From NCBI RefSeq assembly GCF_032062105.1, contig NW_026928438.1, positions 186,001 through 250,000 on the forward strand: a stretch of 64,000 nt of DNA, written 5' to 3'. A program made the translations under genes and the position numbers. Every line of letters begins with the position of its first letter. The first letter of the stretch is position 1. The stretch comes from Saccostrea cucullata. Its lineage: Eukaryota. The notes under the pieces are model-generated. The model ran no database searches. It worked only from the letters and a program-made list of their open reading frames with translations, and was not told the origin of the DNA. Below are positions 25,200-55,030 of the stretch, piece after piece.

Positions 25200-28100
25200 A
25201 TGGTTGATACAATAAAAATTGCAACTGTGAATTGTCAAGGGTTAGCGACGCCGTCTAAGCGACAAGATGTTCTAAATTTCTATAAAACAAAAAAATATTC
25301 TATATTATGTATTCAAGACACACATTTTATTTCTGAAATAGAACCATATGTGGAAGCACAGTGGAGATACAAATGTATTTTTAATTCTTTCAGATCAAAT
25401 TCAAGGGGAGTATGTATATTGTTTAATAATGATTTTGAATTTAAGATTCACAAAGAAAAGACAGACAATGATGGTAATTTTTTAGCTTTAGACCTTACAA
25501 TTGAAGAAAACAAAGTCACTTTGATAAATATCTATGGGCCAAATTGTGATAGCCCGGAATTTTACGAAAATGTAAGAGACGCTTTTTTAGAGTTTGATAA
25601 CGATTATTATATTTTATGTGGCGACTTTAATCTTGCTCTAAATCCATCAATTGATACACAAAATTATAGGAACATAAATAATCCACATGCTCGAGAAAAA
25701 CTTTTAGAAATCATGGATCATTTACAGATAATAGATTATTACAGAATTTTAAATCCTGACAAAAAGATATACACTTGGAGAAGAAAAAACCCTGTTAAGC
25801 AGGGTCGCCTTGATTATATTTTAATTTCTGAAAATTTATCTAATTTGGTTGAGAATTTTTCTATCAAACCTGGATATAGGTCAGACCATTCTGTTGTTGT
25901 TTTAGAACTGAAATTCAATTCTTTTGAAAGAGGGAAAGGACTTTGGAAATTTAACAACAGTTTGTTAATAGATAAAAATTTTATTGCAAAGGTTAAAGAA
26001 ACTATTAAAGAAGTCCGCAGAAAATATCTGCAGGATACAGATAATCATGTTCATCAGTACACTGAAAATATTGATGATATCTTGTTTCTTGAGGTTCTTT
26101 TAATGGAAATTAGGGGGGTTACAATTTCATATTCTTCTTACAAAAAAAGAGAAAGAGAAAAATTAGAAAAAGGCTTGATTGAAGAAATAGAAAGTCTAGA
26201 AAATAATAATGATATCAACATGGAATTATTAGAACAGAAAAAATTAGATCTCGAAAATATAAGAAAGGAAAAACTACAAGGACACATTATAAGATCTAAA
26301 GCAAGATGGGTCGAGGAAGGAGAAAAACCTACAAAATACTTTTGCAATCTTGAATCACGAAATTTCTTAAATAAAATTATTAAAAGGGTTGAATTGAATG
26401 AAAACAATATTATATATGATCAATCAGAAATTTTGAACCAAGTCAAAAAGTTTTATCAAGATTTATATTCTAATACAGATTATGAACTGATTGACATTGA
26501 TTTAGAAGAAATTATAAACTCAACTAAAATTCCAAAATTAGATAAAATCACCTCTATTGATTTAGAAAAGGATATTGAAGAAAATGAAGTTTTACAAGTT
26601 TTAAAAAATATGAAGAATGATAAATCTCCTGGAAGTGATGGTTTCACAACTGAATTTTTTAAATTTTTCTGGAGTGATCTTAAAATCTATATTATGCGAG
26701 CGATAAATTGTATTTTGTCAAAAAAAGAACTTCCTATATCACAAAGACTAGGGATAATTTCATGTATACCCAAAGGGGATAAACCAAGACAGTTTTTGAA
26801 AAATTGGAGACCAATAACTCTACTAAATGTACTTTATAAACTAATATCAGGATGCCTAAGTTACAGAATAAAATCTACTCTAGATCTCTTGATTTCCGAC
26901 ACACAAACTGGATTCCTAAAAGGAAGATATATTGGTGAAAACACCAGATTTATTTATGATTTAATGGCATACACGGAAGCTAAAAATATACCAGGATTGT
27001 TGGTTTTAATCGATTTTGAAAAGGCTTTTGATTCAATTTCATGGTCTTTTATTTATAAAGTATTGAAATATTTTGGTTTTGGTAATAATATAATTAATTG
27101 GATAAAAATCCTTAATACAAATTTTAAAGCATCAGTTTTGCAATGCGGATTCTTATCAGAACAATTTGATATCCAAAGGGGTTGTAGACAAGGAGATCCC
27201 GTTGCTCCATACTTATTTCTTCTTTGTGCTGAAATTCTAGCTATTCTAATTAAACAAAATACTGATATAAAAGGCATTGTTGTCAATGACAAAGAACATA
27301 AGATTTCTCAATATGCTGATGACATGTCGCTAGCTCTTGATGGCTCACCAAGATCCCTATTTGCTGCTCTTGAAACCATTGACTTTTACTCTAGATTATC
27401 TGGTTTAAAAATAAACAGTTCTAAGACAAAAATTGTATGGATAGGCTCTAAAAAATTTTCTAATGAGGTGTTTCATCATTCTAGATGGAAACTAGATTGG
27501 GGATGCACAACCTTTGATCTACTAGGAATAAATTTTTCTGTTGAACTCGATAAAATAAATGAAATTAACTACGATAGTATAATACCCAAATTTAAAGCAT
27601 TAATACAACATTGGAAACGGAGAATACTAACTCCAATTGGTCGTGTTACAGTTGTTAAAACTATACTTATACCAAAATTAAATCACCTATTTATATCATT
27701 GCCAACACCAAAACCTGTAGTAATTTATTCTCTCTGTCGAGACATTTTTGAGTTCATTTGGAAATCAAAGTGTGACAAAATTAATAGAGCTACTATAACG
27801 CAGGATTATTTATTAGGGGGACTTAAAATGATTAATATAAGCAAATTTATAATGGCCTTGAAATGTTCTTGGATTAAAAGATTGTCAAACTATTGTTGTA
27901 ACAAACCATGGATAGATTTATTCATGGCTGTAAATGGTAATGACATTTTAAACAAGCTACTTGATTTTGGGGTCGATTTTGTTCGTAAAATCTTAATTAC
28001 AAAAAACAATAAATTCTGGCAAGATGTTTTTATTTCATGGCTTGAAGTTATAAAAACTCTGAATGATTCAGTTTCTCAAGACAATTTCTTAAATATACCA

Positions 28101-28835
28101 GTATGGTATAACTCAAAAATCAAAGTTAATAACAAAAGCATTTTTATTCAAGATTGGTATAAGAATGGTGTTAAAACTATCCGTGATTTTTTAGATGAAA
28201 GGGGTATTTTTCTTACTCAAAAGACTTTTCAACAAAAATTTAACATTTCTACAGTATGTATAATGCAGTATAACAGTGTTGTTTGTTCAATCTCAAAGTA
28301 CATAAAGGATATGTCAATAGATAGATTCTCAGTGAAAAATATGTATGGACCTTTTTTACCTGTTTATTTTCAAGACATACTGTTGTATGAAAAATGTACA
28401 AAATATATTTACAATTGTCTTAATACAAAGGAAACTGTTTTAAAAGCTTTATCCAAGTGGAATGTAGAATTATCTCCATATGGAATCAATGAAATTTGTG
28501 TAAAAGATGTTTTTAAAGTATGTTTTAAAACAACAAAGGACTCAACAATTCAATGGTTACAATTTAGAATTTTACATAGGATTCTACCTGTTAACTCTTA
28601 TTTAAAAAAAATTAAGATAAAGAATTCAGATATTTGTACTTTTTGTAAACAAGAAGTAGAAACTATTCAACATGTTTTCATTGGTTGTGAAAAAGTTTTA
28701 TCTCTGTGGACCAGCCTCAGTTTACATATTTACCAAACAATGAAAAAAAGAGTTGGTTTTAATGTTGAAAATGTTATTCTAGGTGAAATACCAATGACAT
28801 ATAACAACAGAGTCAAGAATTTTATAATATTATAA
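25200..28835 (+). CDS. LINE ORF2p: APE endonuclease, reverse transcriptase and C-terminal CCHC zinc finger
   Basis: TVNCQG, GDFN, RLDY and SDH (APE); KSPGSDG, NWRPITLLN, IDFEKAFDS, GCRQGDP and QYADD (RT); CTFC...HVFIGC. The frame continues past the TAA at 28833 to a TGA at 29004-29006. Confidence 0.95.
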   Translation: MVDTIKIATVNCQGLATPSKRQDVLNFYKTKKYSILCIQDTHFISEIEPYVEAQWRYKCIFNSFRSNSRGVCILFNNDFEFKIHKEKTDNDGNFLALDLTIEENKVTLINIYGPNCDSPEFYENVRDAFLEFDNDYYILCGDFNLALNPSIDTQNYRNINNPHAREKLLEIMDHLQIIDYYRILNPDKKIYTWRRKNPVKQGRLDYILISENLSNLVENFSIKPGYRSDHSVVVLELKFNSFERGKGLWKFNNSLLIDKNFIAKVKETIKEVRRKYLQDTDNHVHQYTENIDDILFLEVLLMEIRGVTISYSSYKKREREKLEKGLIEEIESLENNNDINMELLEQKKLDLENIRKEKLQGHIIRSKARWVEEGEKPTKYFCNLESRNFLNKIIKRVELNENNIIYDQSEILNQVKKFYQDLYSNTDYELIDIDLEEIINSTKIPKLDKITSIDLEKDIEENEVLQVLKNMKNDKSPGSDGFTTEFFKFFWSDLKIYIMRAINCILSKKELPISQRLGIISCIPKGDKPRQFLKNWRPITLLNVLYKLISGCLSYRIKSTLDLLISDTQTGFLKGRYIGENTRFIYDLMAYTEAKNIPGLLVLIDFEKAFDSISWSFIYKVLKYFGFGNNIINWIKILNTNFKASVLQCGFLSEQFDIQRGCRQGDPVAPYLFLLCAEILAILIKQNTDIKGIVVNDKEHKISQYADDMSLALDGSPRSLFAALETIDFYSRLSGLKINSSKTKIVWIGSKKFSNEVFHHSRWKLDWGCTTFDLLGINFSVELDKINEINYDSIIPKFKALIQHWKRRILTPIGRVTVVKTILIPKLNHLFISLPTPKPVVIYSLCRDIFEFIWKSKCDKINRATITQDYLLGGLKMINISKFIMALKCSWIKRLSNYCCNKPWIDLFMAVNGNDILNKLLDFGVDFVRKILITKNNKFWQDVFISWLEVIKTLNDSVSQDNFLNIPVWYNSKIKVNNKSIFIQDWYKNGVKTIRDFLDERGIFLTQKTFQQKFNISTVCIMQYNSVVCSISKYIKDMSIDRFSVKNMYGPFLPVYFQDILLYEKCTKYIYNCLNTKETVLKALSKWNVELSPYGINEICVKDVFKVCFKTTKDSTIQWLQFRILHRILPVNSYLKKIKIKNSDICTFCKQEVETIQHVFIGCEKVLSLWTSLSLHIYQTMKKRVGFNVENVILGEIPMTYNNRVKNFIIL

Positions 28836-29544
28836 TCAAAACAATACATTTTCACATGTTTAATGCAAGATAAAATTCCAAATCTTTTGGGCTTATTAAA
28901 TCACATTAAATTGAAACATAATATTGAAAAATGTGTAGCTATCAAAAATTTCCACATAGATAAATTTGAAAAAGAATGGTCTTTGTGGAAAAACATATTT
29001 CAATGAGCTTATTATAAAAATATTATATACTGTTTGTTTTTCATAAAGAGATTTGTCAATATAAATCTATACAGAGTAGTAAATATATGTTCTAAGTAAA
29101 GTTGTAATAAGATATATGAATCATTATTTTTTCCAAACCATTTTGTTATTATTTTCATGATCTAAAGAATGAGACTGTATGTAAGTCAGTAAGAGTGTGT
29201 GAATGAAAGCAGTCAAAATGTAAAAAAGCTCATAAATTGTTTATAATTTCATACAAATTGTGATGTTGGGCAATATAAATAAAAAAAAAAAAAAAAAAAA
29301 AAACTTGCTTGTCAATAATTTACCTCGTTTTAGAAATTGTTCTCACGTAGAGCATGCTCTTGCGTATCGAATCAACTTAGATATATATACTCCGTATGCA
29401 GGTGATGAAGGTATTTTGCTGCATAAGTAAGGGAAGTTGACGATAGAAAAGTTAAAGTCATCACGTTTATCATATAGCTTGGTCCTTAGATTACCATTAT
29501 CGTCTTCTTTTTCAAGTACAATATCCAAATTTGAAACGGATGTG

Positions 29545-29620
29545 TCTCTTTAAGTTGAAAGATATCTCTATTTTTTAGAGATATTTCTCTAAAATGAGAG
29601 ATATCTCTGTAACTTCAAGA
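29545..29620. repeat. GAGATATCTC motif array (right part; mirrored at ~39875-39947)
   Basis: Joining 23258 to 29545 restores the unit AAGATATCTC. Confidence 0.7.
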
Positions 29621-30484: not shown

Positions 30485-30668
30485 TATATTACATGGCTTT
30501 GAGGGCAGCATACCAGAATATTTGCCCCAAGGTGACAGGAAAGCCCTGGAGTGTTATGTCGCCCGATTCCGAAGGCAGAGTACGTGCGACATAACACTCC
30601 TGGGCTTTTCTGTCACCGAGGGGCAAATATTCTGGTATTGCTGCCCGAGAATAACGCCATGTAATATA
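30485..30668. repeat. ~180-bp imperfect hairpin element (mirrored at ~38824-39007)
   Basis: TACATGGC...ATACCAGAATATTTGCCCC...GTGTTATGTCGC / GCGACATAACAC...GGGGCAAATATTCTGGTAT...GCCATGTA around a CCGAAGG-containing loop. Confidence 0.75.
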
Positions 30669-31450: not shown

Positions 31451-31690
31451 CGAGGGGTGATCAAGAACTTTGCGCAAGCTATCTCTATACACAAAAGCAC
31501 AATTCAAATCGGAATGAAATTTGGTACACATAGAGTCAAACACATGTTCTATAAATAACATATGTAGTGAAATGTGTTCATGTTTGTGAGGTCACAGTGT
31601 GAAAATGACATCAATATAAAGATCACATGTGACAAAAAATGGTTAATTTAGTCGTATTAGAGCCATAAACGGCTGGAAAAATACAAATAT
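31451..31690. mobile_element. Tc1/mariner-like MITE fragment (related copies at ~37805-38041, ~43365-43595, ~52975-53205)
   Basis: CGAGGGGTGATCAAGAACTTT terminus; shared block TATTTATAGAACATGTGTTTGACTCT. Confidence 0.55.
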
Positions 31691-34516: not shown

Positions 34517-34974
34517 CGAGGGTTGTCTCAAAATATGCGAATAATTTCAATATTTTTTTTGTTTTACTAACATCATAAAATTAAATATTGGTATGCTTTA
34601 AAACAACAGTTTTTGATAATTCTCAGAAACAGTAAAATATCTCTATAAATGACATTTTTCCCATCGTTAGATAAATCATTCAACATAGCTGCCGCAGCAA
34701 CACTGATGACGTCAAAACGTAACTCTTGGAAATTTTTGATCCTTAACGCATTCAAAAATTTCCAAGAGTTACGTTTTGACGTCATCAGTGTTGCTGCGGC
34801 AGCTATGTTGAATGATTTATCTAACGATGGGAAAAATGTCATTTATAGAGATATTTTACTGTTTCTGAGAATTATCAAAAACTGTTGTTTTAAAGCATAC
34901 CAATATTTAATTTTATGATGTTAGTAAAACAAAAAAAATATTGAAATTATTCGCATATTTTGAGACAACCCTCG
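34517..34974. mobile_element. Tc1/mariner-like MITE forming the centre of palindrome 1
   Basis: TA|CGAGGGTTGTCTCAAAA ... TTTTGAGACAACCCTCG|TA; terminus resembles 54770 and 56334. Confidence 0.65.
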
Positions 34975-35499
34975 TATACATGTATAGAGGATATAGAGAC
35001 ACGGTTTAAATAAAGTAATGGTGATGTTAACAATCTTATTATATTAAGCTTAATATACTACCTGTTCGTCTTTCAAAGAAGACAAAGCAATGGTGACATG
35101 TACCTATATATTGTATATACAAATTTTGGATTCATATTGCATGAATACCTTTTGCTGAAAGTAAAGGTGTTAATTTTAGTCTGTCTGTCTGTCTATACGT
35201 CCTTCAGCCCTTCTGTCTGTGATCCTATACTTTCTTAAGCTTCAAATACATATTGATATCCCTGCTTTTTCAAAAAAAAATTACAAGACAACTCCCTGTT
35301 GCCTAATATAGACCCCTATTGATACGGAGTTCAAAGGTCATTATTAAGAAGAAAAATGATAAATAATGTTTGTTTTAAAACTCTCGTTTCCGCACGATAT
35401 TTCAAGAACCTGCCGGGCTTTTTCAGTTAAATTTTATACCGTAGTAGAAACTCCCTATGGCTCTGTCTGTCCCTCTTAAAGTGTCTTCTTTCTTAATTT

Positions 35500-37390
35500 G
35501 TCTTCGATTCATCTGTTCTACCAGTGGCTGTGACGATGCTGCTTAAGTATTTAAACGAGTCTGCATCTTAAAAGTTGTGCTCTCCAAGCGTAACTGGTGT
35601 TTGCTGTTTGTTGTGGAGCCGCATTACCTCTGTCTTTTCGATATTCACCTTTAGACCTGTCTTTGCTACTTCTTTTGCAAGCCTATTTGTCTTGAGCTGT
35701 ATATGCTCATACTTCAGGGACATGAGGCATAGATCGTCTGCAAAGTCGACGTCTTCCAAACAATGAGTGACAGTCCACTGGTCTTACTATCTTTATTTGT
35801 CCTCCGTATGATCCAGTCTACTACCACTAGAAAAAATCATTGATGACAGTAGACAGCCTTGTCTAACCCTTGTCTGCACCTCAAAAGGTTTCCATTGTGG
35901 ATGACTTGGCATATAATCTCGTCATACAATTGTTGTATGAGGTTGATGAAAGTAGAGGGCGTTCCATAATGCTGTAGTAATTTCCAGATGACTTTTCTAT
36001 CAACACTATCAAAGGCCTTTTCAAAGTCTATGAAGTTCAGATACAGTGTTGACTGCACAACTCCAGTGACTGTTCGATTATTATACATAGAGTGACGACC
36101 TGGTCTGTACAGGACTTTTCCTTTCTAAAGCCTGCCTGTTCTGTGTCAGGATAATGCTTGGGATGGATCGGAGCATGATGCAACGCCAGTTCTTGCATTT
36201 TCCAGGGTCTTCTTTCTTGGGTAGCTTCACTAGATGTCCTTTTCTCCAATCAGCTGGTACGTTCCCCTCGGACCATATCTTCTCCAGGAGAGGTAGTAAC
36301 ATATCTTCTGAAGTCTTTATGTCTGCTTAAATGGCTTCTGGAGGAATTCCATCAGGCCCAGCTGCTTTCCCACTCTTTAGTTTCTTCAGAGCCTTGATGG
36401 TTTCATCCCTTGTGGGAGGAGTGGTGATCACTGTTAGTTCAGAATCTCCTTGTGGTATGTTTTGTGTTGTTTCTGGTGCTGGGTGATTTGAGAGTTCTCT
36501 GAAATGTTCTGCCAAGCGCTTTCTCTGATCTTCTTCCTTTGTTAGAGCCTTGCCTTCCCTGTCTTTTACTGGTATTTATCTTGGCATTCATGTCACCCAT
36601 CAAGATTTTCATATCTCGTCTTGTCCACTGCTGCCTGCAATATTGTTTCCTCATCTTCAGAGTTTGTACGTGAGATTACAGTTTCTTCTCTTCATTTGGA
36701 GTGGAATCTTGCTGTCATAATCCTTGATGAGATTGGTTTCCATTCAGTCAGTGCATTGGCAGTAGCTGGTGACATCGTGATGGTAATTCCTTCAGTGTGA
36801 TCATGATTTTAATCTGAATGTCAAGAGTATATGATCTTTTCTCCGCTAGTCAATGAAGACATGCCAGCTCCATTTCATCTGCTCTCACATATTTCAAAGA
36901 GTTGGATGTTGTATCTCCTCATCTCTCTGGCTACCTGGGCTGCCTTTCCAGTTTAAAACATGGTTCGCACATTCCAGGTTCCAATTCTTGATGCTGCTTT
37001 CATCATCAGGAGAACCTTAGGCTGACTGGTTTTCATACGGCTTTCACCAGTCTGCGTTTTACGGCTTCTAGGTGAGGCATCCACCTGAATCGAGCGTTGG
37101 ATTTCTTCTTCTGTTGCTCTGGTTTCTGTAGCGTAGAGAGTTTTTACATGATAGGGCTGTAAACCCTAGGCAAAACCCCCTGGACCCGGAGGACCGGTTG
37201 TTTTCTGATGGAGTTTTCCTTCCCCTAGTCACAGGTTCCAGTTATTTAAAGGCGCTGGAGATTGGCCTTTCCCTAGTCACAGGTTCCAGTTATTTAAAGG
37301 CGCTGGAGACTGGCCTTTTGCCACTGTCACTCAGCTACTGAAAGCATTCCCAGGGTCACCATGAAAATGTACGACATGCGACTAGCTGGC
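35500..37390 (-). pseudogene. Mirror copy of the degenerate RTE LINE
   Basis: Same broken ORFs on the minus strand (35568-36654). Confidence 0.9.
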
Positions 37391-40188
37391 AGAACCTTTT
37401 TGAGACAGTAGGCATTAATTCGAGGTTTTGGTAGTGCAACTTTGTGACATCGGTTGAACTCTTCGAGACCTTTACCAGCCTTTGACCCCACACTAGTATC
37501 TAATATGTTAAAATCTAAAGTAAACGATATTTCGGTGATCTATTACTCAGTAATCGTATTGTTTTTATATGATATTCAACTATGTTTCTTACTGTACATT
37601 GCCGATATTTCATATCAAATTGCTTAACAAAGTACACATCTCTTTGCCAGCTTGCTTCCACTGGGCAACAGAACAAACATTAATTTTAATCATCTCCCTT
37701 CCCTTACTAAACCCAATAAATAACTACACTTCTGGTAAGTCTTTTGACTTTATAAACCGTGTACAAATTATAATATATTGCTGTAAAGGAATTTTAAAAA
37801 CATATTTGTATTTTTCCAGCCGTTTATGGCTCTAATACGACTAAATTAACCATTTTTTGTCACATGTGATCTTTATATTGATGTCATTTTCACACTGTGA
37901 CCTCACAAACATGAACACATTTCACTACATATGTTATTTATAGAACATGTGTTTGACTCTATGTGTACCAAATTTCATTCCGATTTGAATTGTGCTTTTG
38001 TGTATAGAGATAGCTTGCGCAAAGTTCTTGATCACCCCTCGGAAGCAAGAGAAGTTGACGATAGAATACCACATTGTACATGCACTTGTGTATTAATTTT
38101 TTAAAAGTGAAATTCGGGGTTTTGCTTCTGTGCTAATAAGATATTTAATATAAATTAAATAAATTTTTACTAAGTGTCAAATATAACACGTTTCTTTCAT
38201 ACTACTTATCTCCCTTGATCATGTAATGTGATTTAGACTTCATACAGAAACCGACTAATGTAGTTTAGAATGTTTCCTGTCCTAACCCATTCCATGAAGG
38301 AATAATTTTACATAATTTGTTTTTATTTTGCAGATCAATTGGCGGAAAAGGTATTGCATCTTTGTCCTGGCTGCATCATTAAAATGGATACCACTGGATG
38401 TCGATTAGATACAGCCAGTACAGCTGTCAGTCGTACCAGTATCACCGGAGGAACTACCGGGGTATGATATCATTTTATTATAAAACACACAATTACAAAT
38501 TTGCAGAAATGTATTGCTGATGATTCATTAGTATTTTGTCATCAACTCTCTTGATCCCAGAGTTCAGCTATAAATAGTTCATTAATAAATGCAGGTATAA
38601 CCTATTCTACTACCGAGCAAGTTAATTATTGTGTTTTATTTAAATTGTTTGCCTGTTATATATATTTTATCATTCGTAGGGTATATGTGTATTTTACATG
38701 TTTAGTAGCTTGCGTTATTTAAAATTGTGTCCCTTGTGTATCGAATCACATACATGTGTACATAGTGTTCAATAAATATGTTCGATGATCGGTATGGGTT
38801 CAATGATTAAAAATGTTATATCATATATTACATGGCGTTATTCTCGGGCAGCAATACCAGAATATTTGCCCCTCGGTGACAGAAAAGCCCAGGAGTGTTA
38901 TGTCGCACGTACTCTGCCTTCGGAATCGGGCGACATAACACTCCAGGGCTTTCCTGTCACCTTGGGGCAAATATTCTGGTATGCTGCCCTCAAAGCCATG
39001 TAATATACATATAATATTTGGGAGAGGTTTAACTATACTTGATCTAAAAGGTTAGAAAGCCGAAATTTCCCTTCCCATTACTTAATGTCTTATTGCTGTG
39101 TTTCTAAAGTGGAGAGTAGATAAATAACTCTCTTTGACTAACTGTCACTTCACACATGTGAACTTTCTCTTTCGAGGGACCAATCTCCACGCATGTTGCA
39201 CAGAAAACATTCGCTAAAACAAAAGTGCACTTGCATCTTGTGTACATTGTTAAGGGTTTCAAAAAGCTCCATGCATCAAATGATACAATGCCATGAAAAG
39301 AGTTTTGCTGCAAACAAATCAAGAATGGTTTCTTTAATTTTATAAGTGCATCATTACCTTGAAATCCAATGAAGTCGGCATATTCTTTACTAATACGTCA
39401 AATAAAATGATGAGATTGATTTCACAATCACGGAAAATGTTTATCGGCGTAACAATATATCTGCATTGAATTAGGTCATTACATTGCGGCGTTTTTTTTC
39501 CTACAGTAGGCTTAGTGTACATGTATATATATATATGTATAGTTATAATGCGCAGAGTTGCATGATTTGCGTCATTGCACTATAGATGGTGAAAAGCAAT
39601 ATACTAAGTTATCATTATTAATGTTAGTAAAATATAAAGAATCTATGTCTCTGCATAGGAAGGTAAACACATTCCGTATTGGCATTTGTTGTACTCTCAG
39701 AGCTAAATTATTCTGCACGTACGTGTATATATGTCTAATAATATATTTTAGTTTTATTGAGTCAACTCTAATCTTTTGCATCGTGTTGCATATACTGTCA
39801 GAAATTTTAAATGTGCTCTTGTGTTTAGTATGGCAAACCTTTTTGCTATTTATTTGAAAAATAAAATCTATCTTGAAGTTACAGAGATATCTCTCATTTT
39901 AGAGAAATATCTCTAAAAAATAGAGATATCTTTCAACTTAAAGAGACACATCCGTTTCAAATTTGGATATTGTACTTGAAAAAAAAAGACGATAATGGTA
40001 ATCTAAGGACCAAGCTATATGATAAACGTGATGACTTTAACTTTTCTATCGTCAACTTCCCTTACTTATGCAGCAAAATACCTTCATCACCTGCATACGG
40101 AGTATATATATCTAAGTTGATTCGATACGCAAGAGCATGCTCTACGTGAGAACAATTTCTAAAACGAGGTAAATTATTGACAAGCAAG

Positions 40189-41685: not shown

Positions 41686-41945
41686 AATTTTTGTATGTTG
41701 ATAAGAAAATCGGTAAAAGTTTTTATCTGGAGAGTTTTACCGGTTTCAAGGTGATAGCGTGCTCATAATAGATCTTGTCCGCGAACTTTCCTAACAACCT
41801 TCGTACAAGTGGTTCACGAAAAGGGGTGATCGAGTGTGTAAAGGCTCGTATAACGAGGGGCTACTTTTTTTCGAGTTTATTTTAACAGTAAATCTTAATT
41901 TAGATACCTTAGATACCCCTCCACACACACACCCTCTCACTTCTG

Positions 41946-42028
41946 GTCATCTTCCCAAGTCAAGAGTTTCTGATCCGCTCCGCTCCACTAGCGGAGCGGA
42001 TCAGAAACTCTTGACTTGGGAAGATGAC
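41946..42028. mobile_element. 83-bp hairpin mini-element with 5-bp TSD (variant mirror at ~54554-54627)
   Basis: GTCATCTTCCCAAGTCAAGAGTTTCTGATCCGCTCCGCT / AGCGGAGCGGATCAGAAACTCTTGACTTGGGAAGATGAC flanked by TTCTG. Confidence 0.7.
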
Positions 42029-45000
42029 TTCTGGTATATTCAAGGTTTCTTTTTCGGAAAAGTTAACCAAAAATAAGAACCCACCCCTTACAAACATACG
42101 CACGAAATAGGAATTTTGAGATCGGATTATCAAAACAATTTAGGTTTTTTTTAGGGGGTTCAGGTTTATTAAGACGCCCACCCTATCGGGCTTTCTAGTA
42201 GTCGGGTTACTAGTAGTGGCAGAACTAGCTGTAGCTCTTCAAAAATATTTTGACAGACTGTCTATCAATATATATTTTTTCGGAGAGCTACTAACAGTAC
42301 AGTTTTCAGCTATGGGCCGGGTACATTTGATAAATTATGTAAGGTCTACGTTAGAAAATAATTATATTTTAAGGTGTACAAACATCTGAAATAAACCTTT
42401 TTCAAGTTCGATAGAATTTTCAATGATAAATCACGAAAACTTGTGAATAGTTATTATGCATAACTCTGTTTCAATTACACTGCATTTGTATATATTAAAT
42501 TTTAATCGTACTGCATTTCCTGCAAAAAGTGAAAGGCAAAAAAGTTTTTATACCTTTACCTACTTTGTTTGTGACGTCACAGTAACGTAACGTCATAGAT
42601 TTAACGTAATAAAAAACTGTCACGGCACTGTGTGTAATTTGAACTCCAAATCTGTACGACAGTGAAAAGGTTAAGTGAATTTATAGATGTGTATGAAGGC
42701 TGAATTATTATGCAATCAAATCTTACCATTGCCCATTTTTGGGACAAGGCGGGTTAAAGTAATGCAAATTCTACTACGATTATTGCCGAGATCAAAGAAA
42801 TGCCGCGGACATTATTCTCCAAATAAATTACAAATGTCATCAAATATCCGATCAGAAACACGTATCAAAACTGTGCAGATGAAATGTACATTTGAGTTAA
42901 GAATGAAATACAAATTTAGACTACATCGATGTGTAGTGTTTTGCAATTTAAATACTGTATATTGCAGAAAGTAGCTGATGAATGTAGGTTTTTAAAGCTA
43001 AGCGGGACTGTTTCACGAACCTCCCTGAACTCTGTGATTTTAGTGATAAAGTGGTAAATTAGGAAACTGATTTTGTTATTGTATATTCAAAGAAGATTTA
43101 TCCATATAAGCTACAAACAGGTTTTTGATGAATAAAAGGATATTTTTAATGCGGCAAAAGCCCAAATCGTCTGCAGTCTATTCACAGGTCTACAAACAAA
43201 TCTAATCTCTGGTGCTAAACGAAACAGCGTTATCGCAGCATGGTGACCTAATTCGTTTCTCTAAAGGAAAATGATCAGTCGAATTTTAGAGATAAACTGC
43301 GTAAAAATCGTACAGTATATGCTTATGTAGTTATGTATAATTTCAAAGATACATGTATATTTTTAACTTTACAGCCGTTTGTTGCTCGAATACGACTGAG
43401 TCAACCATTTTTTATCATAAGTGATCTACGTATTGACGTCATCATCACATTGTGGCGTCACAAACATGAAGCAAAGCATTTCATTACATATGCTATTTAT
43501 AGAACATGTGTTTGACTCTGTTTGTGCCAAATTTCACTCTCGTTTGAATTGTAGTTTTGTAAATATAGAAATAGTTCTCAAACTTTTTGATCAAAACTCA
43601 TATGTAAGCATTATATTCATGCATAGAACATGTAGAAAAGTAATAAATGTCATTTACATACAACTCATTCTTCAATACTGGTGTTTTTTTTAAATATTAA
43701 TTTTCTCCTTTATTTTCCAATAAATAATGTGTAAGCAGATAGATTGATATTGCTAAAATTTGATATTTGTATGAGAATATAGTTTAAATAGTTTTTTTGA
43801 ATATGGTTGAGGAATAAAAAATATTGATCATAGTTGTATTGCATTCAGGAGAGTTCAATAACTGAAATTGTGACATTATTAAGGAATTGGCATAAAATAC
43901 TGTTTTATCAAAATAATAAATCACTTGACATGATATATGTGTACATAGTTTTAGTATATAAATAAAACGATGTATTCCTTTTGTCAAACGTGCTAAAATT
44001 ATCCTAATTTTCCCGAACTTAAATAATATTCCAAGTTAAATTTCCGTGTTTAATAAATGAGTATGGGTAATTTATTATTTTTTTAAAAAAGGCTTCATAA
44101 ACATAACTCAATTCTTTGTGTAATTTTAATATTTGGTGTCTTGACCGTTACGAACATAAAAGCTTTCAGTATGATATAACAGCCAAATAACAGCCAATGA
44201 ATCATATTTATGGATCATGGGGTCCGTGGTAGTGGTATAATTATAAATTGAAAATGAAAGTAAAGAGGTGGCGCAGCTGTCTGCTAGAAAACATGGCGTC
44301 GCTCATTGTGCCCATGTGGAAAAGAAAGTTACGAACATAATAGATAGGGTGAGTAGATTCGAATTGTACCAATTTGATTGAATGTATATCACATAAGTAC
44401 AGTAATTGTATCTTTATACCATGTACCTGTTAATCAGAAACTAAAAAATGTTGATTATGACCACACAAAATGCATTGATCTGTCCGAGTTGAGTACCTTC
44501 GGTTAAACATTTAACTTTTGATTCGCGTCTTTTGTTATGAACATGTGTTTTAACATTATTTGTATTGTCTATTACTGATTAACTTACATTGTACTATATT
44601 TAATTCTATATTTGTTGGTTTTGTTTTGGTCTAATCAAAGGGTGAATATTTATCGAATATTTTTTTTAAAATATTGCCATATCGATAACGTTCGTAATGG
44701 AGACACGAAAACTTGAAATGGTGAAATAATTTGTGCTTTGATTGCCTTGTTTCTAGTGTTTCGAGGATATTTAATAAAGTATAGTTATATTAGATAAAAA
44801 GTAACTTAAAATGATTTTTTATCATAAATTTTATAGTTATTATAACTTGAAAGAAAACATGAATGACCACAACAAATTTTAGTGTCCATTGTTTGAACGT
44901 AACATTTGTTTTCTTTTATAAAAAAAGTTTTTCAAACAACTGAGAAGTAATATATTTAAGAAACATGTGTTTTCAATACCACTGGCTAATGGTCTATTTT

Positions 45001-46694
45001 GTTTTATATATTTTTTATTTCTTTCAGATTTACAAAAAGTGACTGAATTATGTTCGTAACAATGACACAAAGATCCACAAGACTCAAAATAGAAGACCTA
45101 CATATAGTATGTTTAGCCATTCAACTGACAATTTACTTGTCTGCATTTATTCTCTTTGAAAGCTAGTCTATTATTGAGCTTTGAAATACAATATTAAAAG
45201 TATTACAGACAAGTGTTTGACTGTTTTGTTATTTTTTGTTCCTTTTTTAAGCCTTAGATTCGGATTTAGGTGTCCATGTTACATGAAAGTATGAATAAAA
45301 ATTGTGACTTTTTAAATAAATTCCGTTTGATTAAACATCAAATATGATTTCATCCTACCCCTTTGATCACATTATTTTAATATTTTAACAACTTGTTAAT
45401 TTTTAGTAATATGTTACTTGATTAGTGTTTATATGAAAGTAACGGTGTCCAATGGTAATCTTGAATATATTTTCTTATTATAAGTGAAATAAGGCAGAAA
45501 TAAGTCATGCAATAAAACATACAAACTAGTGTTTATACATGGATACTTCTAAAAGGATACACCAGAAAAGTATAGCTCATTGATTAAAAACACAGTCCCT
45601 GTGGACTCCCAAGTTACGTACGTAAAATTTCAAACATGCCTGTACAATTGGACACTTATCTCCTCTTTAAGACTTCAGATTATCTTCCCATCATTTGTTT
45701 TTCAGAGGAGGAAAGGTACTGACTCACATAAATAATGAAACTGATTATTTGAAAAAAAAAATCGCCCTTTTGATCACAAATCTAAATTTAGTTCTGAAGA
45801 ATGAGTTATATATACATGTACAACTACATCTATACTCACAGGCAATAATGAGAAATAGTTCTCAGGAATTTGTTCGCAGCAAACGTTCTCTATTTCAGTG
45901 GGTTTCTTAGGACAATATATATAAGTGCACCAGAATGGTGTAACACCTGGTGGTGGATGGTATCCTCTGAGCGTTGACTTACTTTTCGAGGATTCTTCCA
46001 AAACGTCGAAAACCAAGGAGGGATTTCTCTTACACAGTTAAATTCTGAGATGAGGGCAAATGTCATCAATAAAATGTCCAGTTTTTTCTTCAAATTATAC
46101 AAAAATTATTTTTTTTTATTTTAATGGATTTATTCTAATTATTACCTAATGAAAACCTTTAATTTTCAAAACCTTCTTCCCGTTTTTTTAATAATGCTTA
46201 TAAATGCATCCAAAATTTTAGCACGGAACTATGGAAAATGAGAAAAAGTTTTGTGGGAACAATGATATCATAAACTCCTGAATTACAATTATTCATACCT
46301 TCAGTTCCTGCCTATGTACATGTACATTCATTACATCTTAAATGTCTTTTGCCCTTTTATTCAACATCTGTGTTTTCCCTCTTTTTCTTGATGCTTTCAG
46401 AGCTACTTTTGAACTTTGTTGTTGGTCAAATTAAGAATTAGTCCGCTTAATTAATCGAATTCGCACAAAGTTTATTTTCTAACGTCATGACGTCAAACAG
46501 TGCTGAATTTGGTCTAGTTATCGGAGAGCAAAGGGGAGAGTTAATGTCTATATTCAAAGCACTATGATTAAAAAAAATATGATCACATTGTCCAATCTAG
46601 ATAAGCAGATACATGTGAACTATTTGGCTAATCCATGTTTAGTTAAATGACCTGAAGCACTTAATAAGAAAAGTTCATTTGGAATTCGTTGTTG

Positions 46695-47650
46695 TTTTTT
46701 TTTTATGCACCCGTAAACGATGTTTCTGGGGTACATAGTTTTTGTTGTGTCCGTCCGTCTGTCTAGCTGTCTCTCCGTCTGTCTCTCTGTTTGTCTGTTT
46801 GTCCGCAAAAACTTTGACCTTGCCCATAATTTTTGATTTAGTGGAGCCATGACTTTCAAATTTCACATGTGTATTTCTTGTGTATTGACAAGACCTTTCT
46901 TTGGGTACCACCAAATTTGACCTTTTGACCTTGACCTTGGAGTTTGACCCACTTTTACATGAAAATTTTTTCTTTGGTCATATTTTTCGAGCAGTAAATA
47001 CCAGGACATTTATACTTCACATATGAAATATTTGTTGAAAGACCTTTCATTTGATACCAACAACCTTGACCCTTTGACATTGACCTTGTAGATTTGCATA
47101 CTTGTGAAAAACTTTAACCTTTGCCATTACTTTTGAACGGTAAGGGATAGGGCTTTCATACTTTATGTGTAATCCTTGTGAGAAGACCCTTTTGGATATC
47201 AAAATCTTTGACCCTTTGACCTTGTCCTTTGAGTTTGACCATGACTTTTAAAGGGTTAGGCCTAGTGCTTTCATACTTTACACATTTAATTCTTGTGACA
47301 AGACCTTTCATTTGATAAGATGAATTTTTACCCTTTGACCTTGGAGTTTGACCTACTTAAAAAAAAATAACCATGGCCATAACTTTTGCACGGTTAGGGC
47401 TAGGTCTTTTATCCTCTACATTATATGGCAAGGCCTTTCATTAGATACCAATGACATTGACTGTTTGACCTTGACCTTGGAGAATTTTGTACTTATTGAA
47501 AAACTTTAACATTGGCCTACTTTCAAATTTCACAATTGTTTTCCAGTGAGAATACCCTACTTTTGGAACCAATTAATTAAATTTGCATTTAAGAAAAGTT
47601 TAATCTTTGTTTGTTGCCATACGGGGGCATCAGTGTTTCACAAACACATT
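46695..47650 (-). mobile_element. CvA/pearl-type Helentron-like element with diverged core repeats
   Basis: Terminal stem-loop, (CTGT)n, repeated TTGACCTTGACCTTGGAGTTTGACC cores, GGGGGCATCAGTGTTTCACAAACACAT end. Confidence 0.8.
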
Positions 47651-48929
47651 TCTTTTTTATGAAATTGAAATAAAATTGTTATTATCAAACTTAGAAAAAG
47701 AATCGAGAAAAATCCAGCATTGAATATTTTATCAAGATTCCAATTGCAATCAAAGTCCCTCATATTATTCTATGTAGTATTGTGAAAAATTTTGAATATG
47801 ACGTGATCATAATCAGAATAAGCCAAGAAAAAGATGGCCCAATCGGCGTAAGTTAAAATAAAACCTCATTCGAATGAAATCATTTGACATAAGAAATTAG
47901 ACTATCTATGTATGGATATCTTTAAAGCCAATTTCACAAGGGGTAGTTTTTGTACCATATTATGCATATACCATTACACTATGACTATGAATTACTACTA
48001 TAATAGTAGTTTATGCAAACGGCAGTGCGATGGGACAGAAGAGTGCATTAATGTATCAAAACAATATTACTACTGACATCAACATAAAAACTTTATTAGT
48101 TAGATATTGAACGCACTAGCTCAGAAATTTCTTAAGAAGACTCACTAGGAAAGCATTTGTGAATTAAATGATACGATTCATCTAAATAAACAAAGACTAT
48201 TAAAAGAAAATGATATTAGAAAGTAAATGAAATGCATAAAGGTTGACATCAATGCTTTTTTTAGTTTCATTGCTAAATTAAGTGATTAAATACCATTTAA
48301 AGAAATGAATAATTCTAGAGCCTAAGGATCATAAGTAGTTGTCAATGTCAATCAGCATTATGCTGAAATTTTCTTTTAATAGTCTTTGTTTATTTAGATG
48401 AATCGTATCATTTAATTCACAAATGCTTTCCTAGTGAGTCTTCTTAAGAAATTTCTGAGCTAGTGCGTTCAATATCTAACTAATAAAGTTTTTATGTTGA
48501 TGTCAGTAGTAATATTGTTTTGATACATTAATGCACTCTTCTGTCCCATCGCACTGCCGTTTGCATAAACTACTATTATAGTAGTAATTCATAGTCATAG
48601 TGTAATGGTATATGCATAATATGGTACAAAAACTACCCCTTGTGAAATTGGCTTTAAAGATATCCATACATAGATAGTCTAATTTCTTATGTCAAATGAT
48701 TTCATTCGAATGAGGTTTTATTTTAACTTACGCCGATTGGGCCATCTTTTTCTTGGCTTATTCTGATTATGATCACGTCATATTCAAAATTTTTCACAAT
48801 ACTACATAGAATAATATGAGGGACTTTGATTGCAATTGGAATCTTGATAAAATATTCAATGCTGGATTTTTCTCGATTCTTTTTCTAAGTTTGATAATAA
48901 CAATTTTATTTCAATTTCATAAAAAAAGA

Positions 48930-49870
48930 AATGTGTTTGTGAAACACTGATGCCCCCGTATGGCAACATAACAAAGATTAAACTTTTCTTAAATGCAAAT
49001 TTAATTAATTGGTTCCAAAAGTAGGGTATTCTCACTGGAAAACAATTGTGAAATTTGAAAGTAGGCCAATGTTAAAGTTTTTCAATAAGTACAAAATTCT
49101 CCAAGGTCAAGGTCAAACAGTCAATGTCATTGGTATCTAATGAAAGGCCTTGCCATATAATGTAGAGGATAAAAGACCTAGCCCTAACCGTGCAAAAGTT
49201 ATGGCCATGGTTATTTTTTTTTAAGTAGGTCAAACTCCAAGGTCAAAGGGTAAAAATTCATCTTATCAAATGAAAGGTCTTGTCACAAGAATTAAATGTG
49301 TAAAGTATGAAAGCACTAGGCCTAACCCTTTAAAAGTCATGGTCAAACTCAAAGGACAAGGTCAAAGGGTCAAAGATTTTGATATCCAAAAGGGTCTTCT
49401 CACAAGGATTACACATAAAGTATGAAAGCCCTATCCCTTACCGTTCAAAAGTAATGGCAAAGGTTAAAGTTTTTCACAAGTATGCAAATCTACAAGGTCA
49501 ATGTCAAAGGGTCAAGGTTGTTGGTATCAAATGAAAGGTCTTTCAACAAATATTTCATATGTGAAGTATAAATGTCCTGGTATTTACTGCTCGAAAAATA
49601 TGACCAAAGAAAAAATTTTCATGTAAAAGTGGGTCAAACTCCAAGGTCAAAAGGTCAAATTTGGTGGTACCCAAAGAAAGATCTTGTCACAAGAAATACA
49701 CATGTGAAATTTGAAAGTCATGGCTCCACTAAATCAAAAATTATGGGCAAGGTCAAAGTTTTTGCGGACAAACAGACAAACAGAGAGACAGACGGAGAGA
49801 CAGCTAGACAGACGGACGGACACAACAAAAACTATGTACCCCAGAAACATCGTTTACGGGTGCATAAAAA
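48930..49870 (+). mobile_element. Mirror copy of the CvA/pearl-type element
   Basis: Reverse complement of 46695-47650 with small indels. Confidence 0.8.
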
Positions 49871-52800
49871 AAACAACAACGAATTCCAAATGAACTTTTC
49901 TTATTAAGTGCTTCAGGTCATTTAACTAAACATGGATTAGCCAAATAGTTCACATGTATCTGCTTATCTAGATTGGACAATGTGATCATATTTTTTTTAA
50001 TCATAGTGCTTTGAATATAGACATTAACTCTCCCCTTTGCTCTCCGATAACTAGACCAAATTCAGCACTGTTTGACGTCATGACGTTAGAAAATAAACTT
50101 TGTGCGAATTCGATTAATTAAGCGGACTAATTCTTAATTTGACCAACAACAAAGTTCAAAAGTAGCTCTGAAAGCATCAAGAAAAAGAGGGAAAACACAG
50201 ATGTTGAATAAAAGGGCAAAAGACATTTAAGATGTAATGAATGTACATGTACATAGGCAGGAACTGAAGGTATGAATAATTGTAATTCAGGAGTTTATGA
50301 TATCATTGTTCCCACAAAACTTTTTCTCATTTTCCATAGTTCCGTGCTAAAATTTTGGATGCATTTATAAGCATTATTAAAAAAACGGGAAGAAGGTTTT
50401 GAAAATTAAAGGTTTTCATTAGGTAATAATTAGAATAAATCCATTAAAATAAAAAAAAAATAATTTTTGTATAATTTGAAGAAAAAACTGGACATTTTAT
50501 TGATGACATTTGCCCTCATCTCAGAATTTAACTGTGTAAGAGAAATCCCTCCTTGGTTTTCGACGTTTTGGAAGAATCCTCGAAAAGTAAGTCAACGCTC
50601 AGAGGATACCATCCACCACCAGGTGTTACACCATTCTGGTGCACTTATATATATTGTCCTAAGAAACCCACTGAAATAGAGAACGTTTGCTGCGAACAAA
50701 TTCCTGAGAACTATTTCTCATTATTGCCTGTGAGTATAGATGTAGTTGTACATGTATATATAACTCATTCTTCAGAACTAAATTTAGATTTGTGATCAAA
50801 AGGGCGATTTTTTTTTTCAAATAATCAGTTTCATTATTTATGTGAGTCAGTACCTTTCCTCCTCTGAAAAACAAATGATGGGAAGATAATCTGAAGTCTT
50901 AAAGAGGAGATAAGTGTCCAATTGTACAAGCATGTTTGAAATTTTACGTACGTAACTTGGGAGTCCACAGGGACTGTGTTTTTAATCAATGAGCTATACT
51001 TTTCTGGTGTATCCTTTTAGAAGTATCCATGTATAAACACTAGTTTGTATGTTTTATTGCATGACTTATTTCTGCCTTATTTCACTTATAATAATAAAAT
51101 ATATTCAAGATTACCATTGGACACCGTTACTTTCATATAAACACTAATCAAGTAACATATTACTAAAAATTAACAAGTTGTTAAAATATTAAAATAATGT
51201 GATCAAAGGGGTAGGATGAAATCATATTTGATGTTTAATCAAACGGAATTTATTTAAAAAGTCACAATTTTTATTCATACTTTCATGTAACATGGACACC
51301 TAAATCCGAATCTAAGGCTTAAAAAAGGAACAAAAAATAACAAAACAGTCAAACACTTGTCTGTAATACTTTTAATATTGTATTTCAAAGCTCAATAATA
51401 GACTAGCTTTCAAAGAGAATAAATGCAGACAAGTAAATTGTCAGTTGAATGGCTAAACATACTATATGTAGGTCTTCTATTTCGAGTCTTGTGGATCTTT
51501 GTGTCATTGTTACGAACATAATTCAGTCACTTTTTGTAAATCTGAAAGAAATAAAAAATATATAAAACAAAATAGACCATTAGCCAGTGGTATTGAAAAC
51601 ACATGTTTCTTAAATATATTACTTCTCAGTTGTTTGAAAAACTTTTTTTATAAAAGAAAACAAATGTTACGTTCAAACAATGGACACTAAAATTTGTTGT
51701 GGTCATTCATGTTTTCTTTCAAGTTATAATAACTATAAAATTTATGATAAAAAATCATTTTAAGTTACTTTTTATCTAATATAACTATACTTTATTAAAT
51801 ATCCTCGAAACACTAGAAACAAGGCAATCAAAGCACAAATTATTTCACCATTTCAAGTTTTCGTGTCTCCATTACGAACGTTATCGATATGGCAATATTT
51901 TAAAAAAAATATTCGATAAATATTCACCCTTTGATTAGACCAAAACAAAACCAACAAATATAGAATTAAATATAGTACAATGTAAGTTAATCAGTAATAG
52001 ACAATACAAATAATGTTAAAACACATGTTCATAACAAAAGACGCGAATCAAAAGTTAAATGTTTAACCGAAGGTACTCAACTCGGACAGATCAATGCATT
52101 TTGTGTGGTCATAATCAACATTTTTTAGTTTCTGATTAACAGGTACATGGTATAAAGATACAATTACTGTACTTATGTGATATACATTCAATCAAATTGG
52201 TACAATTCGAATCTACTCACCCTATCTATTATGTTCGTAACTTTCTTTTCCACATGGGCACAATGAGCGACGCCATGTTTTCTAGCAGACAGCTGCGCCA
52301 CCTCTTTACTTTCATTTTCAATTTATAATTATACCACTACCACGGACCCCATGATTCATAAATATGATTCATTGGCTGTTATTTGGCTGTTATATTATAC
52401 TGAAAGCTTTTATGTTCGTAACGGTCAAGACACCAAATATTAAAATTACACAAAGAATTGAGTTATGTTTATGAAGCCTTTTTTAAAAAAATAATAAATT
52501 ACCCATACTCATTTATTAAACACGGAAATTTAACTTGGAATATTATTTAAGTTCGGGAAAATTAGGATAATTTTAGCACGTTTGACAAAAGGAATACATC
52601 GTTTTATTTATATACTAAAACTATGTACACATATATCATGTCAAGTGATTTATTATTTTGATAAAACAGTATTTTATGCCAATTCCTTAATAATGTCACA
52701 ATTTCAGTTATTGAACTCTCCTGAATGCAATACAACTATGATCAATATTTTTTATTCCTCAACCATATTCAAAAAAACTATTTAAACTATATTCTCATAC

Positions 52801-54769
52801 AAATATCAAATTTTAGCAATATCAATCTATCTGCTTACACATTATTTATTGGAAAATAAAGGAGAAAATTAATATTTAAAAAAAACACCAGTATTGAAGA
52901 ATGAGTTGTATGTAAATGACATTTATTACTTTTCTACATGTTCTATGCATGAATATAATGCTTACATATGAGTTTTGATCAAAAAGTTTGAGAACTATTT
53001 CTATATTTACAAAACTACAATTCAAACGAGAGTGAAATTTGGCACAAACAGAGTCAAACACATGTTCTATAAATAGCATATGTAATGAAATGCTTTGCTT
53101 CATGTTTGTGACGCCACAATGTGATGATGACGTCAATACGTAGATCACTTATGATAAAAAATGGTTGACTCAGTCGTATTCGAGCAACAAACGGCTGTAA
53201 AGTTAAAAATATACATGTATCTTTGAAATTATACATAACTACATAAGCATATACTGTACGATTTTTACGCAGTTTATCTCTAAAATTCGACTGATCATTT
53301 TCCTTTAGAGAAACGAATTAGGTCACCATGCTGCGATAACGCTGTTTCGTTTAGCACCAGAGATTAGATTTGTTTGTAGACCTGTGAATAGACTGCAGAC
53401 GATTTGGGCTTTTGCCGCATTAAAAATATCCTTTTATTCATCAAAAACCTGTTTGTAGCTTATATGGATAAATCTTCTTTGAATATACAATAACAAAATC
53501 AGTTTCCTAATTTACCACTTTATCACTAAAATCAAGGAGTTTAAAAATATGGCTTAGGGAGGTCCGTGAAACAGCCCCGCCTCGCTTTAGAAACCTACAT
53601 TCATCAGCTACTTTCTGCAATATACAGTGTTTAAATTGCAAAACACTACACATCGATGTAGTCTAAATTTGTATTTCATTCTTAACTCAAATGTACATTT
53701 CATCTGCACAGTTTTGATACGTGTTTCTGATCGGATATTTGATGACATTTGTAATTTATTTGGAGAATAATGTCCGCGGCATTTCTTTGATCTCGGCAAT
53801 AATCGTAGTAGAATTTGCATTACTTTAACCCGCCTTGTCCCAAAAATGGGCAATGGTAAGATTTGATTGCATAATAATTCAGCCTTCATACACATCTATA
53901 AATTCACTTAACCTTTTCACTGTCGTACAGATTTGGAGTTCAAATTACACACAGTGCCGTGACAGTTTTTTATTACGTTAAATCTATGACGTTACGTTAC
54001 TGTGACGTCACAAACAAAGTAGGTAAAGGTATAAAAACTTTTTTGCCTTTCACTTTTTGCAGGAAATGCAGTACGATTAAAATTTAATATATACAAATGC
54101 AGTGTAATTGAAACAGAGTTATGCATAATAACTATTCACAAGTTTTCGTGATTTATCATTGAAAATTCTATCGAACTTGAAAAAGGTTTATTTCAGATGT
54201 TTGTACACCTTAAAATATAATTATTTTCTAACGTAGACCTTACATAATTTATCAAATGTACCCGGCCCATAGCTGAAAACTGTACTGTTAGTAGCTCTCC
54301 GAAAAAATATATATTGATAGACAGTCTGTCAAAATATTTTTGAAGAGCTACAGCTAGTTCTGCCACTACTAGTAACCCGACTACTAGAAAGCCCGATAGG
54401 GTGGGCGTCTTAATAAACCTGAACCCCCTAAAAAAAACCTAAATTGTTTTGATAATCCGATCTCAAAATTCCTATTTCTTGCGTATGTTTGTAAGGGGTG
54501 GGTTCTTATTTTTGGTTAACTTTTCCGAAAAAGAAACCTTGAATATACCAGAAGTCATATTCCCAAGTCAAGAGTTTCTGATCCGCTCTAGTGGAGCGCT
54601 CAGAAACTCTTGACTTGGGAAGATGACCAGAAGTGAGAGGGTGTGTGTGTGGAGGGGTATCTAAGGTATCTAAATTAAGATTTACTGTTAAAATAAACTC
54701 GAAAAAAAGTAGCCCCTCGTTATACGAGCCTTTACACACTCGATCACCCCTTTTCGTGAACCACTTGTA

Positions 54770-55030
54770 CGAAGGTTGTTAGGAAAGTTCGCGGACAAGA
54801 TCTATTATGAGCACGCTATCACCTTGAAACCGGTAAAACTCTCCAGATAAAAACTTTTACCGATTTTCTTATCAACATACAAAAATTTGGTGTTTTCCGG
54901 TGATTTGTAAAAAAATAATAGAGCTATATTAATTTGATAAAACATCCTTTATAGAGCATGCTACTTTTACACAAGTTTACATCACATAGACTTTTTATTG
55001 AAATCAAAAAATGCACTGTTATAAATTATT
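54770..55030. mobile_element. Tc1/mariner-like MITE left part (truncated inverted copy at 41685-41803)
   Basis: TA|CGAAGGTTGTTAGGAAAGTTCGCGGACAAG, colinear with 56334-56570. Confidence 0.7.

What the first reader, a model, noticed from the sequence alone, without database searches (positions are those of the whole stretch)
27809..54888. Two giant palindromes fused back to back (A-A'-B'-B, ~27 kb)
Seen: about 42% of the window is two inverted duplications (arms ~6.9 and ~6.5 kb, by eye about 99% identical or better) with no sequence between them. The inner 13.5 kb is the reverse complement of a B-to-A fusion. The outer copies continue normally into their flanks (the LINE at left, the MITE at right), so the inner arms are the derived ones. 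Established: long palindromes with short spacers are unstable and arise by fold-back, template switching or breakage-fusion-bridge events. Inference: either one complex replication-based rearrangement with three junctions, or a tandem duplication (ABAB) followed by inversion of the central BA with loss at the breakpoints. The two spacers are unrelated, so a clean inversion alone does not explain it.
Basis: partly seen in the sequence, partly recalled or inferred. Interest (0 to 1): 0.85.

Follow-up and report, generated by a model that had tools for sequence, protein, structure and literature searches.

The report
Back-to-back fold-back duplications at rearrangement junction
In an oyster-like genome, two 7-kb stretches of repeat-rich DNA were each copied into a mirror image and joined back to back, most likely as the inherited scar of one DNA-repair or replication accident that also separated an immune (C1q-domain) gene from its upstream DNA; raw reads are still needed to exclude an assembly artefact.

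Summary
In detail: A (27809-34739), a 12-nt spacer, A', then B', a 156-nt spacer, B (48368-54888). The arms differ by 0.42% and 0.28% substitutions, and A' meets B' with one shared base.

It is probably real (about 0.8). A second contig holds fold 2 base for base, and neither fold's unrearranged continuation was found in the assembly. Reads could not test it; the runs served shared only repeats.

New here: a paralogous C1q-domain gene array shows that A and B were not neighbours. The ancestral order was A, gene, reversed B. A gene of that subfamily now lies about 29 kb beyond B, facing back, its upstream DNA stopping about 660 nt short of A's end. The palindromes therefore look like the near junction of an inversion-type rearrangement of 41 kb or more, with both joined ends folded back. 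Tandem duplication plus inversion fits poorly. The far junction was not seen.

The closest known kinds are reciprocal fold-backs in cancer and duplication-flanked inversions. This scan noted the same layout at another locus of this genome (s1-703770; not checked here). No host gene was found in the arms.

The parts
23607..29315 (+). Young full-length LINE with 14-bp target-site duplication (23607-23620 and 29302-29315), ORF1 23888-24868, ORF2 25158-28835 (endonuclease, RT, zf-RVT). It predates the palindrome: arm A begins inside ORF2.
   Evidence: 1.6% substitutions to a sister copy in C13342
27809..34739 (+). Arm A (outer): LINE 3' end, MITE-like repeats, decayed RTE-like fragment (about 32003-33985), then DNA homologous to the upstream region of C1q-domain gene units in C2921
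34513..34739 (+). First ~230 nt of an old dispersed repeat of up to about 800 nt, cut off by fold 1; the remainder is not in the window
34740..34751 (-). Spacer 1, 12 nt; ancestral DNA continuous with the inner arm A'. Two paralogues show GA before and TC after it, a 2-bp inverted microhomology.
34752..41685 (-). Arm A' (inner), reverse complement of A; holds an antisense copy of the LINE's last 1.5 kb including poly(A) and TSD (about 40177-41685)
41685..41685 (.). Central junction A'/B': one shared base, no insert, no homology
41685..48211 (-). Arm B' (inner), reverse complement of B
48212..48367 (.). Spacer 2, 156 nt, AT-rich; found only here and, identical, in contig C12378; ancestral orientation unknown
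48368..54888 (+). Arm B (outer): mostly repeats; blocks at 48565-48913, 49945-50445 and 51223-51866 match DNA downstream of C1q-domain genes in C2921
54768..55024 (+). MITE-like repeat running through the outer end of B (cut at 41685 in B')
59166..60013 (+). Right-flank block 88% identical to C2921:124000-124828, which lies between the B-like block and the C1q exon of that unit; supports the order B, right flank, gene

Best explanation
A real, inherited complex rearrangement made in one episode. Ancestral order (inferred from paralogues): left flank, A, spacer 1, ~660 nt now missing, upstream DNA and C1q-domain gene, right flank reversed, B reversed, spacer 2. DNA was interrupted at two places at least 41 kb apart, just beyond spacer 1 and beyond B. 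Each end turned back on itself at a few bases of inverted homology (2 bp inferred at fold 1), about 7 kb was copied backwards on each, and the two copied ends were joined with one shared base. The gene-bearing segment ended up inverted relative to A. Two routes give this product and cannot be told apart here: serial template switching at a fork (forward, back, forward, back), or two broken ends that folded back or fused with their sisters, broke about 7 kb out and were end-joined. Shown: the three junctions, truncation of a repeat at fold 1, absence of the continuation from the search results, paralogue order, LINE older than the event. Inferred: single event, the far junction, the enzymology. 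No function is proposed; it is a scar.
For: Three junctions at base resolution. Fold 2 and spacer 2 identical in a second contig. No other contig found that carries spacer 2 or the DNA expected beyond fold 1. Two C2921 units read B-like(+), C1q exon(-), A-end-like(-): 48.3-49.9 kb, 52.4 kb, 65.3 kb; and 121.9 kb, 124.0 kb, 126.8 kb, 132.3 kb. C12378 is collinear with the second unit at about 85-88% through B, right flank, C1q exon (36040-36444, 92% aa) and upstream DNA, which stops at 40906; A's end is 86% to the same unit. Only one A and one such gene were found outside C2921. 2-bp inverted microhomology is the commonest size at human fold-back junctions (7 of 13, PMC3907307). Spacer 1 lies on the second-copied arm, as a fork U-turn or a symmetric intermediate allows. 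Near-equal arm lengths have a 1-4% chance under independent log-uniform sizes, suggesting a shared length scale.
Against: The far junction was not seen: C12378 ends at 41449 and no more letters could be fetched. C12378 is 99.8% identical to B but 3-8% different a few kb to the right; old haplotype variation inside a young single-origin inversion is not expected unless that contig is an assembly mosaic, or the inversion is older than the folds. A could belong to a separate, deleted gene unit. No read support. The search tool scores only the best 40 candidates, so absences are not proofs.
Confidence: 0.5

Rival explanations
1. Reciprocal fold-backs around one break or deletion: A and B flanked a segment (a second, convergent C1q unit or other DNA) that was lost; both ends folded back, about 7 kb was copied on each side and the copies were joined. 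No inversion at this event; any A/gene inversion is older or A belongs to another unit.
For: Fewest junctions (three, all seen). Equal resection of two ends of one break would explain near-equal arms. Leaves the right flank free to recombine, which fits the patchwork divergence from C12378. Described in cancers (23 cases in 2588 genomes, PMC12807874).
Against: Needs two complementary losses (A lost its gene; the C12378 gene lost its A) or an older inversion with breakpoints at the same places. Spacer 2 is not the continuation of the repeat cut at fold 1, so the folds are not two sides of a clean cut. Simple 3' fold-back predicts spacer 1 on the outer arm, and it is on the inner arm, so a later flip is needed.
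Confidence: 0.23
2. Assembly or library artefact: chimeric fold-back reads (amplification or sequencing) stitched into a contig, with arm differences coming from polishing with two alleles or with other repeat copies.
For: Fragmented assembly (23869 contigs). Fold-back reads are a known artefact (about 0.55-0.6% of ONT genomic reads, PMC12870357; amplification chimeras, PMC6218980, abstract only). Arm differences cluster in read-length patches, and C12378's B is a mosaic of B and B' variants with almost no third state. A 13.9-kb palindrome with a 12-nt spacer should be unstable (PMC7999016). A second locus with the same layout in one assembly could reflect a shared artefact.
Against: Needs three chimeric junctions in a row, one with no overlap for an assembler to use. 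Fold 2 is identical in two contigs. The true flanks should be assembled somewhere and were not found. Spacers are genomic, not adapter. Isolated substitutions lie in old repeats where mis-mapping is unlikely.
Confidence: 0.17
3. Tandem duplication ABAB (or an excised AB circle) followed by inversion of the central BA with loss at both breakpoints.
For: Reproduces the segment order; either spacer orientation is allowed.
Against: Needs A and B adjacent on one strand, while paralogues put them on opposite strands with a gene between. Needs breaks at nearly the same site in both copies. The spacers are unrelated.
Confidence: 0.06

Closest known systems
Reciprocal foldbacks from breakage-replication/fusion (Zhang et al., Nat Genet 2026, PMC12807874)
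   Same: Two fold-back junctions facing away from each other, short unequal spacers, sister or self joining of staggered ends.
   Different: Defined by the two reciprocal ends of one break, in somatic cancer genomes. Here the fold points are not neighbours in the inferred ancestor, both are capped about 7 kb out and joined to each other on one contig, and the structure appears inherited.
Fold-back inverted duplications with disomic spacer, including inverted-duplication translocations (Hermetz et al. 2014, PMC3907307)
   Same: Germline; single-copy spacer between arms; 2-bp inverted microhomology at the fold; the far end is joined to another sequence.
   Different: Large (Mb in the examples read), one fold next to a terminal deletion, spacers mostly kb-long. 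Here there are two folds, 7-kb arms and spacers of 12 and 156 nt, at an interstitial site.
DUP-INV-DUP / duplication-flanked inversions (PMC7702065) and local n-jumps (PCAWG, PMC7025897)
   Same: Under the best explanation the copy-number pattern is duplication, inverted single-copy segment, duplication, made in one event by template switching.
   Different: The usual form has two junctions with the duplicates at opposite ends of the inversion. Here both duplicates sit at one end as palindromes, with three junctions seen and a fourth implied.
ODIRA inverted triplication (PMC10766186; mechanism detail partly from memory)
   Same: Leading-to-lagging strand switch at short interrupted inverted repeats gives palindromic junctions with short spacers.
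   Different: ODIRA gives a triplication with the folds at the outer edges. Here nothing is triplicated and each duplicated block has its own fold.
Maize Mu killer (from memory; lead from scan note s1-722007)
   Same: An inverted duplication that includes part of a young transposon and could yield hairpin RNA.
   Different: Here about 18 kb of read-through past the LINE poly(A) would be needed; no RNA evidence was examined.

Membership tests
Reciprocal foldbacks | Two fold-back junctions in opposite orientation | tested here: met
Reciprocal foldbacks | Both folds derive from adjacent reciprocal ends of one break | tested here: inconclusive
   Spacer 2 does not continue the repeat cut at fold 1, and paralogues place a gene between A and B, which points against it; the true ancestral allele was not available
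Fold-back inverted duplication (Hermetz type) | Single-copy genomic spacer between the arms | tested here: met
   12 nt homologous to paralogue DNA; 156 nt unique
Fold-back inverted duplication (Hermetz type) | Short inverted microhomology at the fold | tested here: inconclusive
   2 bp (GA/TC) at fold 1, inferred from two paralogues; 2 bp or more arises by chance in about 13% of simulated junctions in that paper; fold 2 has no reference
Fold-back inverted duplication (Hermetz type) | Loss of DNA beyond the fold | tested here: met
   About 660 nt expected beyond spacer 1 not found at unit-level identity; the search scores only 40 candidates
DUP-INV-DUP | Single-copy segment between the duplications is inverted | tested here: inconclusive
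   Inferred from paralogue order; far junction not seen
DUP-INV-DUP | Duplicated copies at opposite ends of the inversion, two junctions | tested here: not met
   Both extra copies lie together at 34752-48211 with three junctions
ODIRA triplication | Three copies with the middle one inverted | tested here: not met
   Two copies each of A and B in the contig
Foldback or giant-TIR transposon | Shared termini, target-site duplication, multiple copies | tested here: not met
   Arm ends fall inside a LINE and a MITE-like repeat; no other copy of the block found
Real inherited structure (versus artefact) | Independent reads across each junction and full depth over arms | not testable with these tools
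   Runs served held 7-10% of the words; the four laid showed short repeat pieces only
Mu killer-like silencer | Hairpin transcript and small RNAs against the LINE | not tested

The most novel reading that the evidence does not exclude
This oyster-like germline repeatedly heals breaks by folding back both ends, copying several kb and joining the copies, and tolerates the resulting 13-14 kb near-perfect palindromes (spacer as short as 12 nt) long enough to be inherited and diverge. That would be a recurrent scar type that reshuffles C1q-domain immune gene arrays and may create hairpin-RNA sources against young retrotransposons.
Probability: 0.2. Interest if true: 0.7.

Novelty: new variant of a known kind. 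Interest (0 to 1): 0.4.

Why it matters
Long palindromes with very short spacers are fragile and rare in natural genomes (PMC10766186, PMC7999016), and paired fold-backs are known mainly from tumours. An inherited, unrearranged example keeps its junctions readable and would allow a test of how such structures form and how long they last in an animal germline. If the layout recurs in this genome it points to a lineage-specific repair bias, and here it touches a C1q-domain gene array, a family with many copies in this assembly. As a single locus it is a scar with no shown function.

Tried and rejected
Reads: the one run search returned five runs holding 7-10% of the words. Laying four of them on 51900-57890, chosen to compare arm and flank depth and to catch the central junction as a loose end, gave only short repeat contigs.

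Later genome searches were run for coordinates only, so C12378 beyond 30 kb and the far junction were not read.

A search for C10575's extent with a repeat-rich query was uninformative; a second showed it continues to at least 252886 at 92% to C12378. Spacer 2 could not be oriented, because the paralogue alignment stops about 200 nt short of it.

Rejected: missed-adapter read (spacers are genomic); giant-TIR or foldback transposon (no shared ends or copies); LINE-induced break (no poly(A) or insertion at any junction; the LINE is intact and older); hAT-type hairpin footprint (spacers of 12 and 156 nt, no transposon ends; criterion from memory); a strong pre-existing hairpin at fold 1 (paralogue z = -0.95).

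No C1q exon was found in the window or in C12378:1-30000. No tRNA or Rfam family lies in the arms. Short open frames in the arms were listed but not scanned against Pfam, so small host exons are not excluded.

Full report
Observation. Self-comparison confirms two abutting inverted duplications. Arm A (27809-34739) and A' (34752-41685) flank a 12-nt spacer; B' (41685-48211) and B (48368-54888) flank a 156-nt spacer. A and A' differ by 29 substitutions (0.42%) and 5 small indels; B and B' by 18 substitutions (0.28%) and about 9-12 indel events. The differences are clustered and reduce to 11 and 7 substitution events when merged within 100 nt. The central junction has one shared base and no insert. 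The outer arms continue into a LINE and a MITE-like repeat.

Setting. The genome has 1.17 Gb in 23869 contigs and the window is C10575:186001-250000. GC is 33%, and the repeat types and many C1q-domain genes suggest a bivalve, probably an oyster; this is inference, as the tools gave no name. The arms are mostly transposon debris. The LINE at 23621-29302 has open ORF1 and ORF2, a perfect 14-bp target-site duplication and 1.6% substitutions to a sister copy. A' contains its 3' end and TSD, so the palindrome is younger than this insertion, which agrees with the low arm divergence.

Is it real? Reads could not decide. The runs found held 7-10% of the words and the four laid gave only repeat pieces. 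Assembly-internal evidence favours a real structure. Contig C12378 starts 312 nt inside B', crosses an identical spacer 2 and follows B and the right flank. No other contig was found with spacer 2, so no unrearranged left flank of B turned up. The DNA expected beyond fold 1 was not found either. An artefact would need three chimeric junctions in a row. Against this: the differences cluster in read-length patches, C12378's B mixes B and B' variants with few private ones, and fold-back reads are a known artefact (PMC12870357). I put reality at about 0.8.

What was there before. Contig C2921 carries four C1q exons of one subfamily and four matches to the end of A at 71-86%. Two aligned paralogues read through A's end into spacer 1 in the orientation of the inner arm, with GA before and TC after it. 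Fold 1 also cuts an old dispersed repeat after about 250 of up to 800 nt. In two C2921 units the order on one strand is B-like DNA, C1q exon on the other strand, then A'. C12378 repeats that order: B, right flank, a C1q exon at 36040-36444 (92% aa) and upstream DNA to 40906 at 74-85%, stopping about 660 nt before the point where A' would join. Outside C2921 the searches found one A and one such gene. The simplest reading is that A is the displaced upstream end of that gene, and that A and B were at least 41 kb apart and in opposite orientation.

Mechanism. In those ancestral coordinates the contig reads forward (left flank, A), back (spacer 1, A'), forward (B'), back (spacer 2, B, right flank, gene). 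That is an inversion-type rearrangement whose near junction consists of two folded-back ends joined to each other. Serial template switching gives this directly and puts spacer 1 on the second-copied arm, as seen. Two broken ends that folded back or fused with their sisters, then broke and were end-joined, give the same product (PMC12807874; PMC3907307). The similar arm lengths (1-4% chance under log-uniform sizes) hint at a shared resection or synthesis length. I give this reading 0.5. Its weak points are the unseen far junction and the 3-8% divergence between the window and C12378 a few kb right of B, which does not suit a young single-origin inversion unless C12378 is an assembly mosaic or the inversion is older than the folds. 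Reciprocal fold-backs around one deletion get 0.23, artefact 0.17, tandem duplication plus inversion 0.06.

Comparison and novelty. Each ingredient is known: fold-back duplications with a spacer and 2-bp microhomology, reciprocal foldbacks in tumours (23 cases in 2588 genomes), duplication-flanked inversions (PMC7702065) and local multi-jump clusters (PMC7025897). I did not find this exact arrangement, both folds capped at about 7 kb and joined to each other in an apparently inherited genome, in the papers read, but the search was limited to nine queries. I checked the paper but not that locus, and the recurrence could reflect either biology or a shared artefact.

Verdict. Confirmed observation, probably real, a new variant of known fold-back rearrangements, with no function shown. 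Interest 0.4; it would rise to about 0.7 if reads confirm it and a genome-wide scan shows a recurrent, tolerated class.

Noticed in passing
window:23607-29315: Full-length young LINE with open ORF1 and ORF2 (endonuclease, RT, zf-RVT) and a perfect 14-bp TSD; its last 1.5 kb is mirrored at about 40177-41685, a possible hairpin-RNA source if read-through occurs.
   Followed up: partly
G000:C2921:48000-149000 (L025, L026, L033, L038): Tandem array of four C1q-domain gene units of one subfamily; three of the four C1q exon matches contain a stop codon. A fifth member lies in C12378:36040-36444 with an open frame.
   Followed up: partly
window:32537-32624 and 53535-53629: Patches of about 90 nt with 9-10 substitutions between arms; in the first, derived bases fall on both arms (4 on A, 6 on A'). 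Conversion from another repeat copy, allele mixing or polishing error.
   Followed up: partly
window:54560-54630 and its mirror near 41970: Small strong hairpin inside a MITE-like element; B, B' and C12378 each show a different loop region, and B' has the perfect version.
   Followed up: no
window:56000-64000 versus C12378:8100-16117: Patchwork divergence between the two contigs: about 2.5% substitutions at 56-58 kb, none at 58-60 kb, 4.6% at 63-64 kb and 92% identity beyond. A third related copy lies on C23592.
   Followed up: partly
window:63455-63526: Degenerate tRNA-like sequence without a clear anticodon, probably a SINE head or pseudogene.
   Followed up: no
window:18459-19188 and 48910-49870: Arrays of 148-nt and related units belonging to a very common repeat family in this genome.
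   Followed up: no
window:14411-16706: An earlier scan note (s1-722029) proposes a cysteine-rich peptide gene interrupted by an RTE insertion here; the 144-aa ORF at 15022-15456 had no Pfam match.
   Followed up: no
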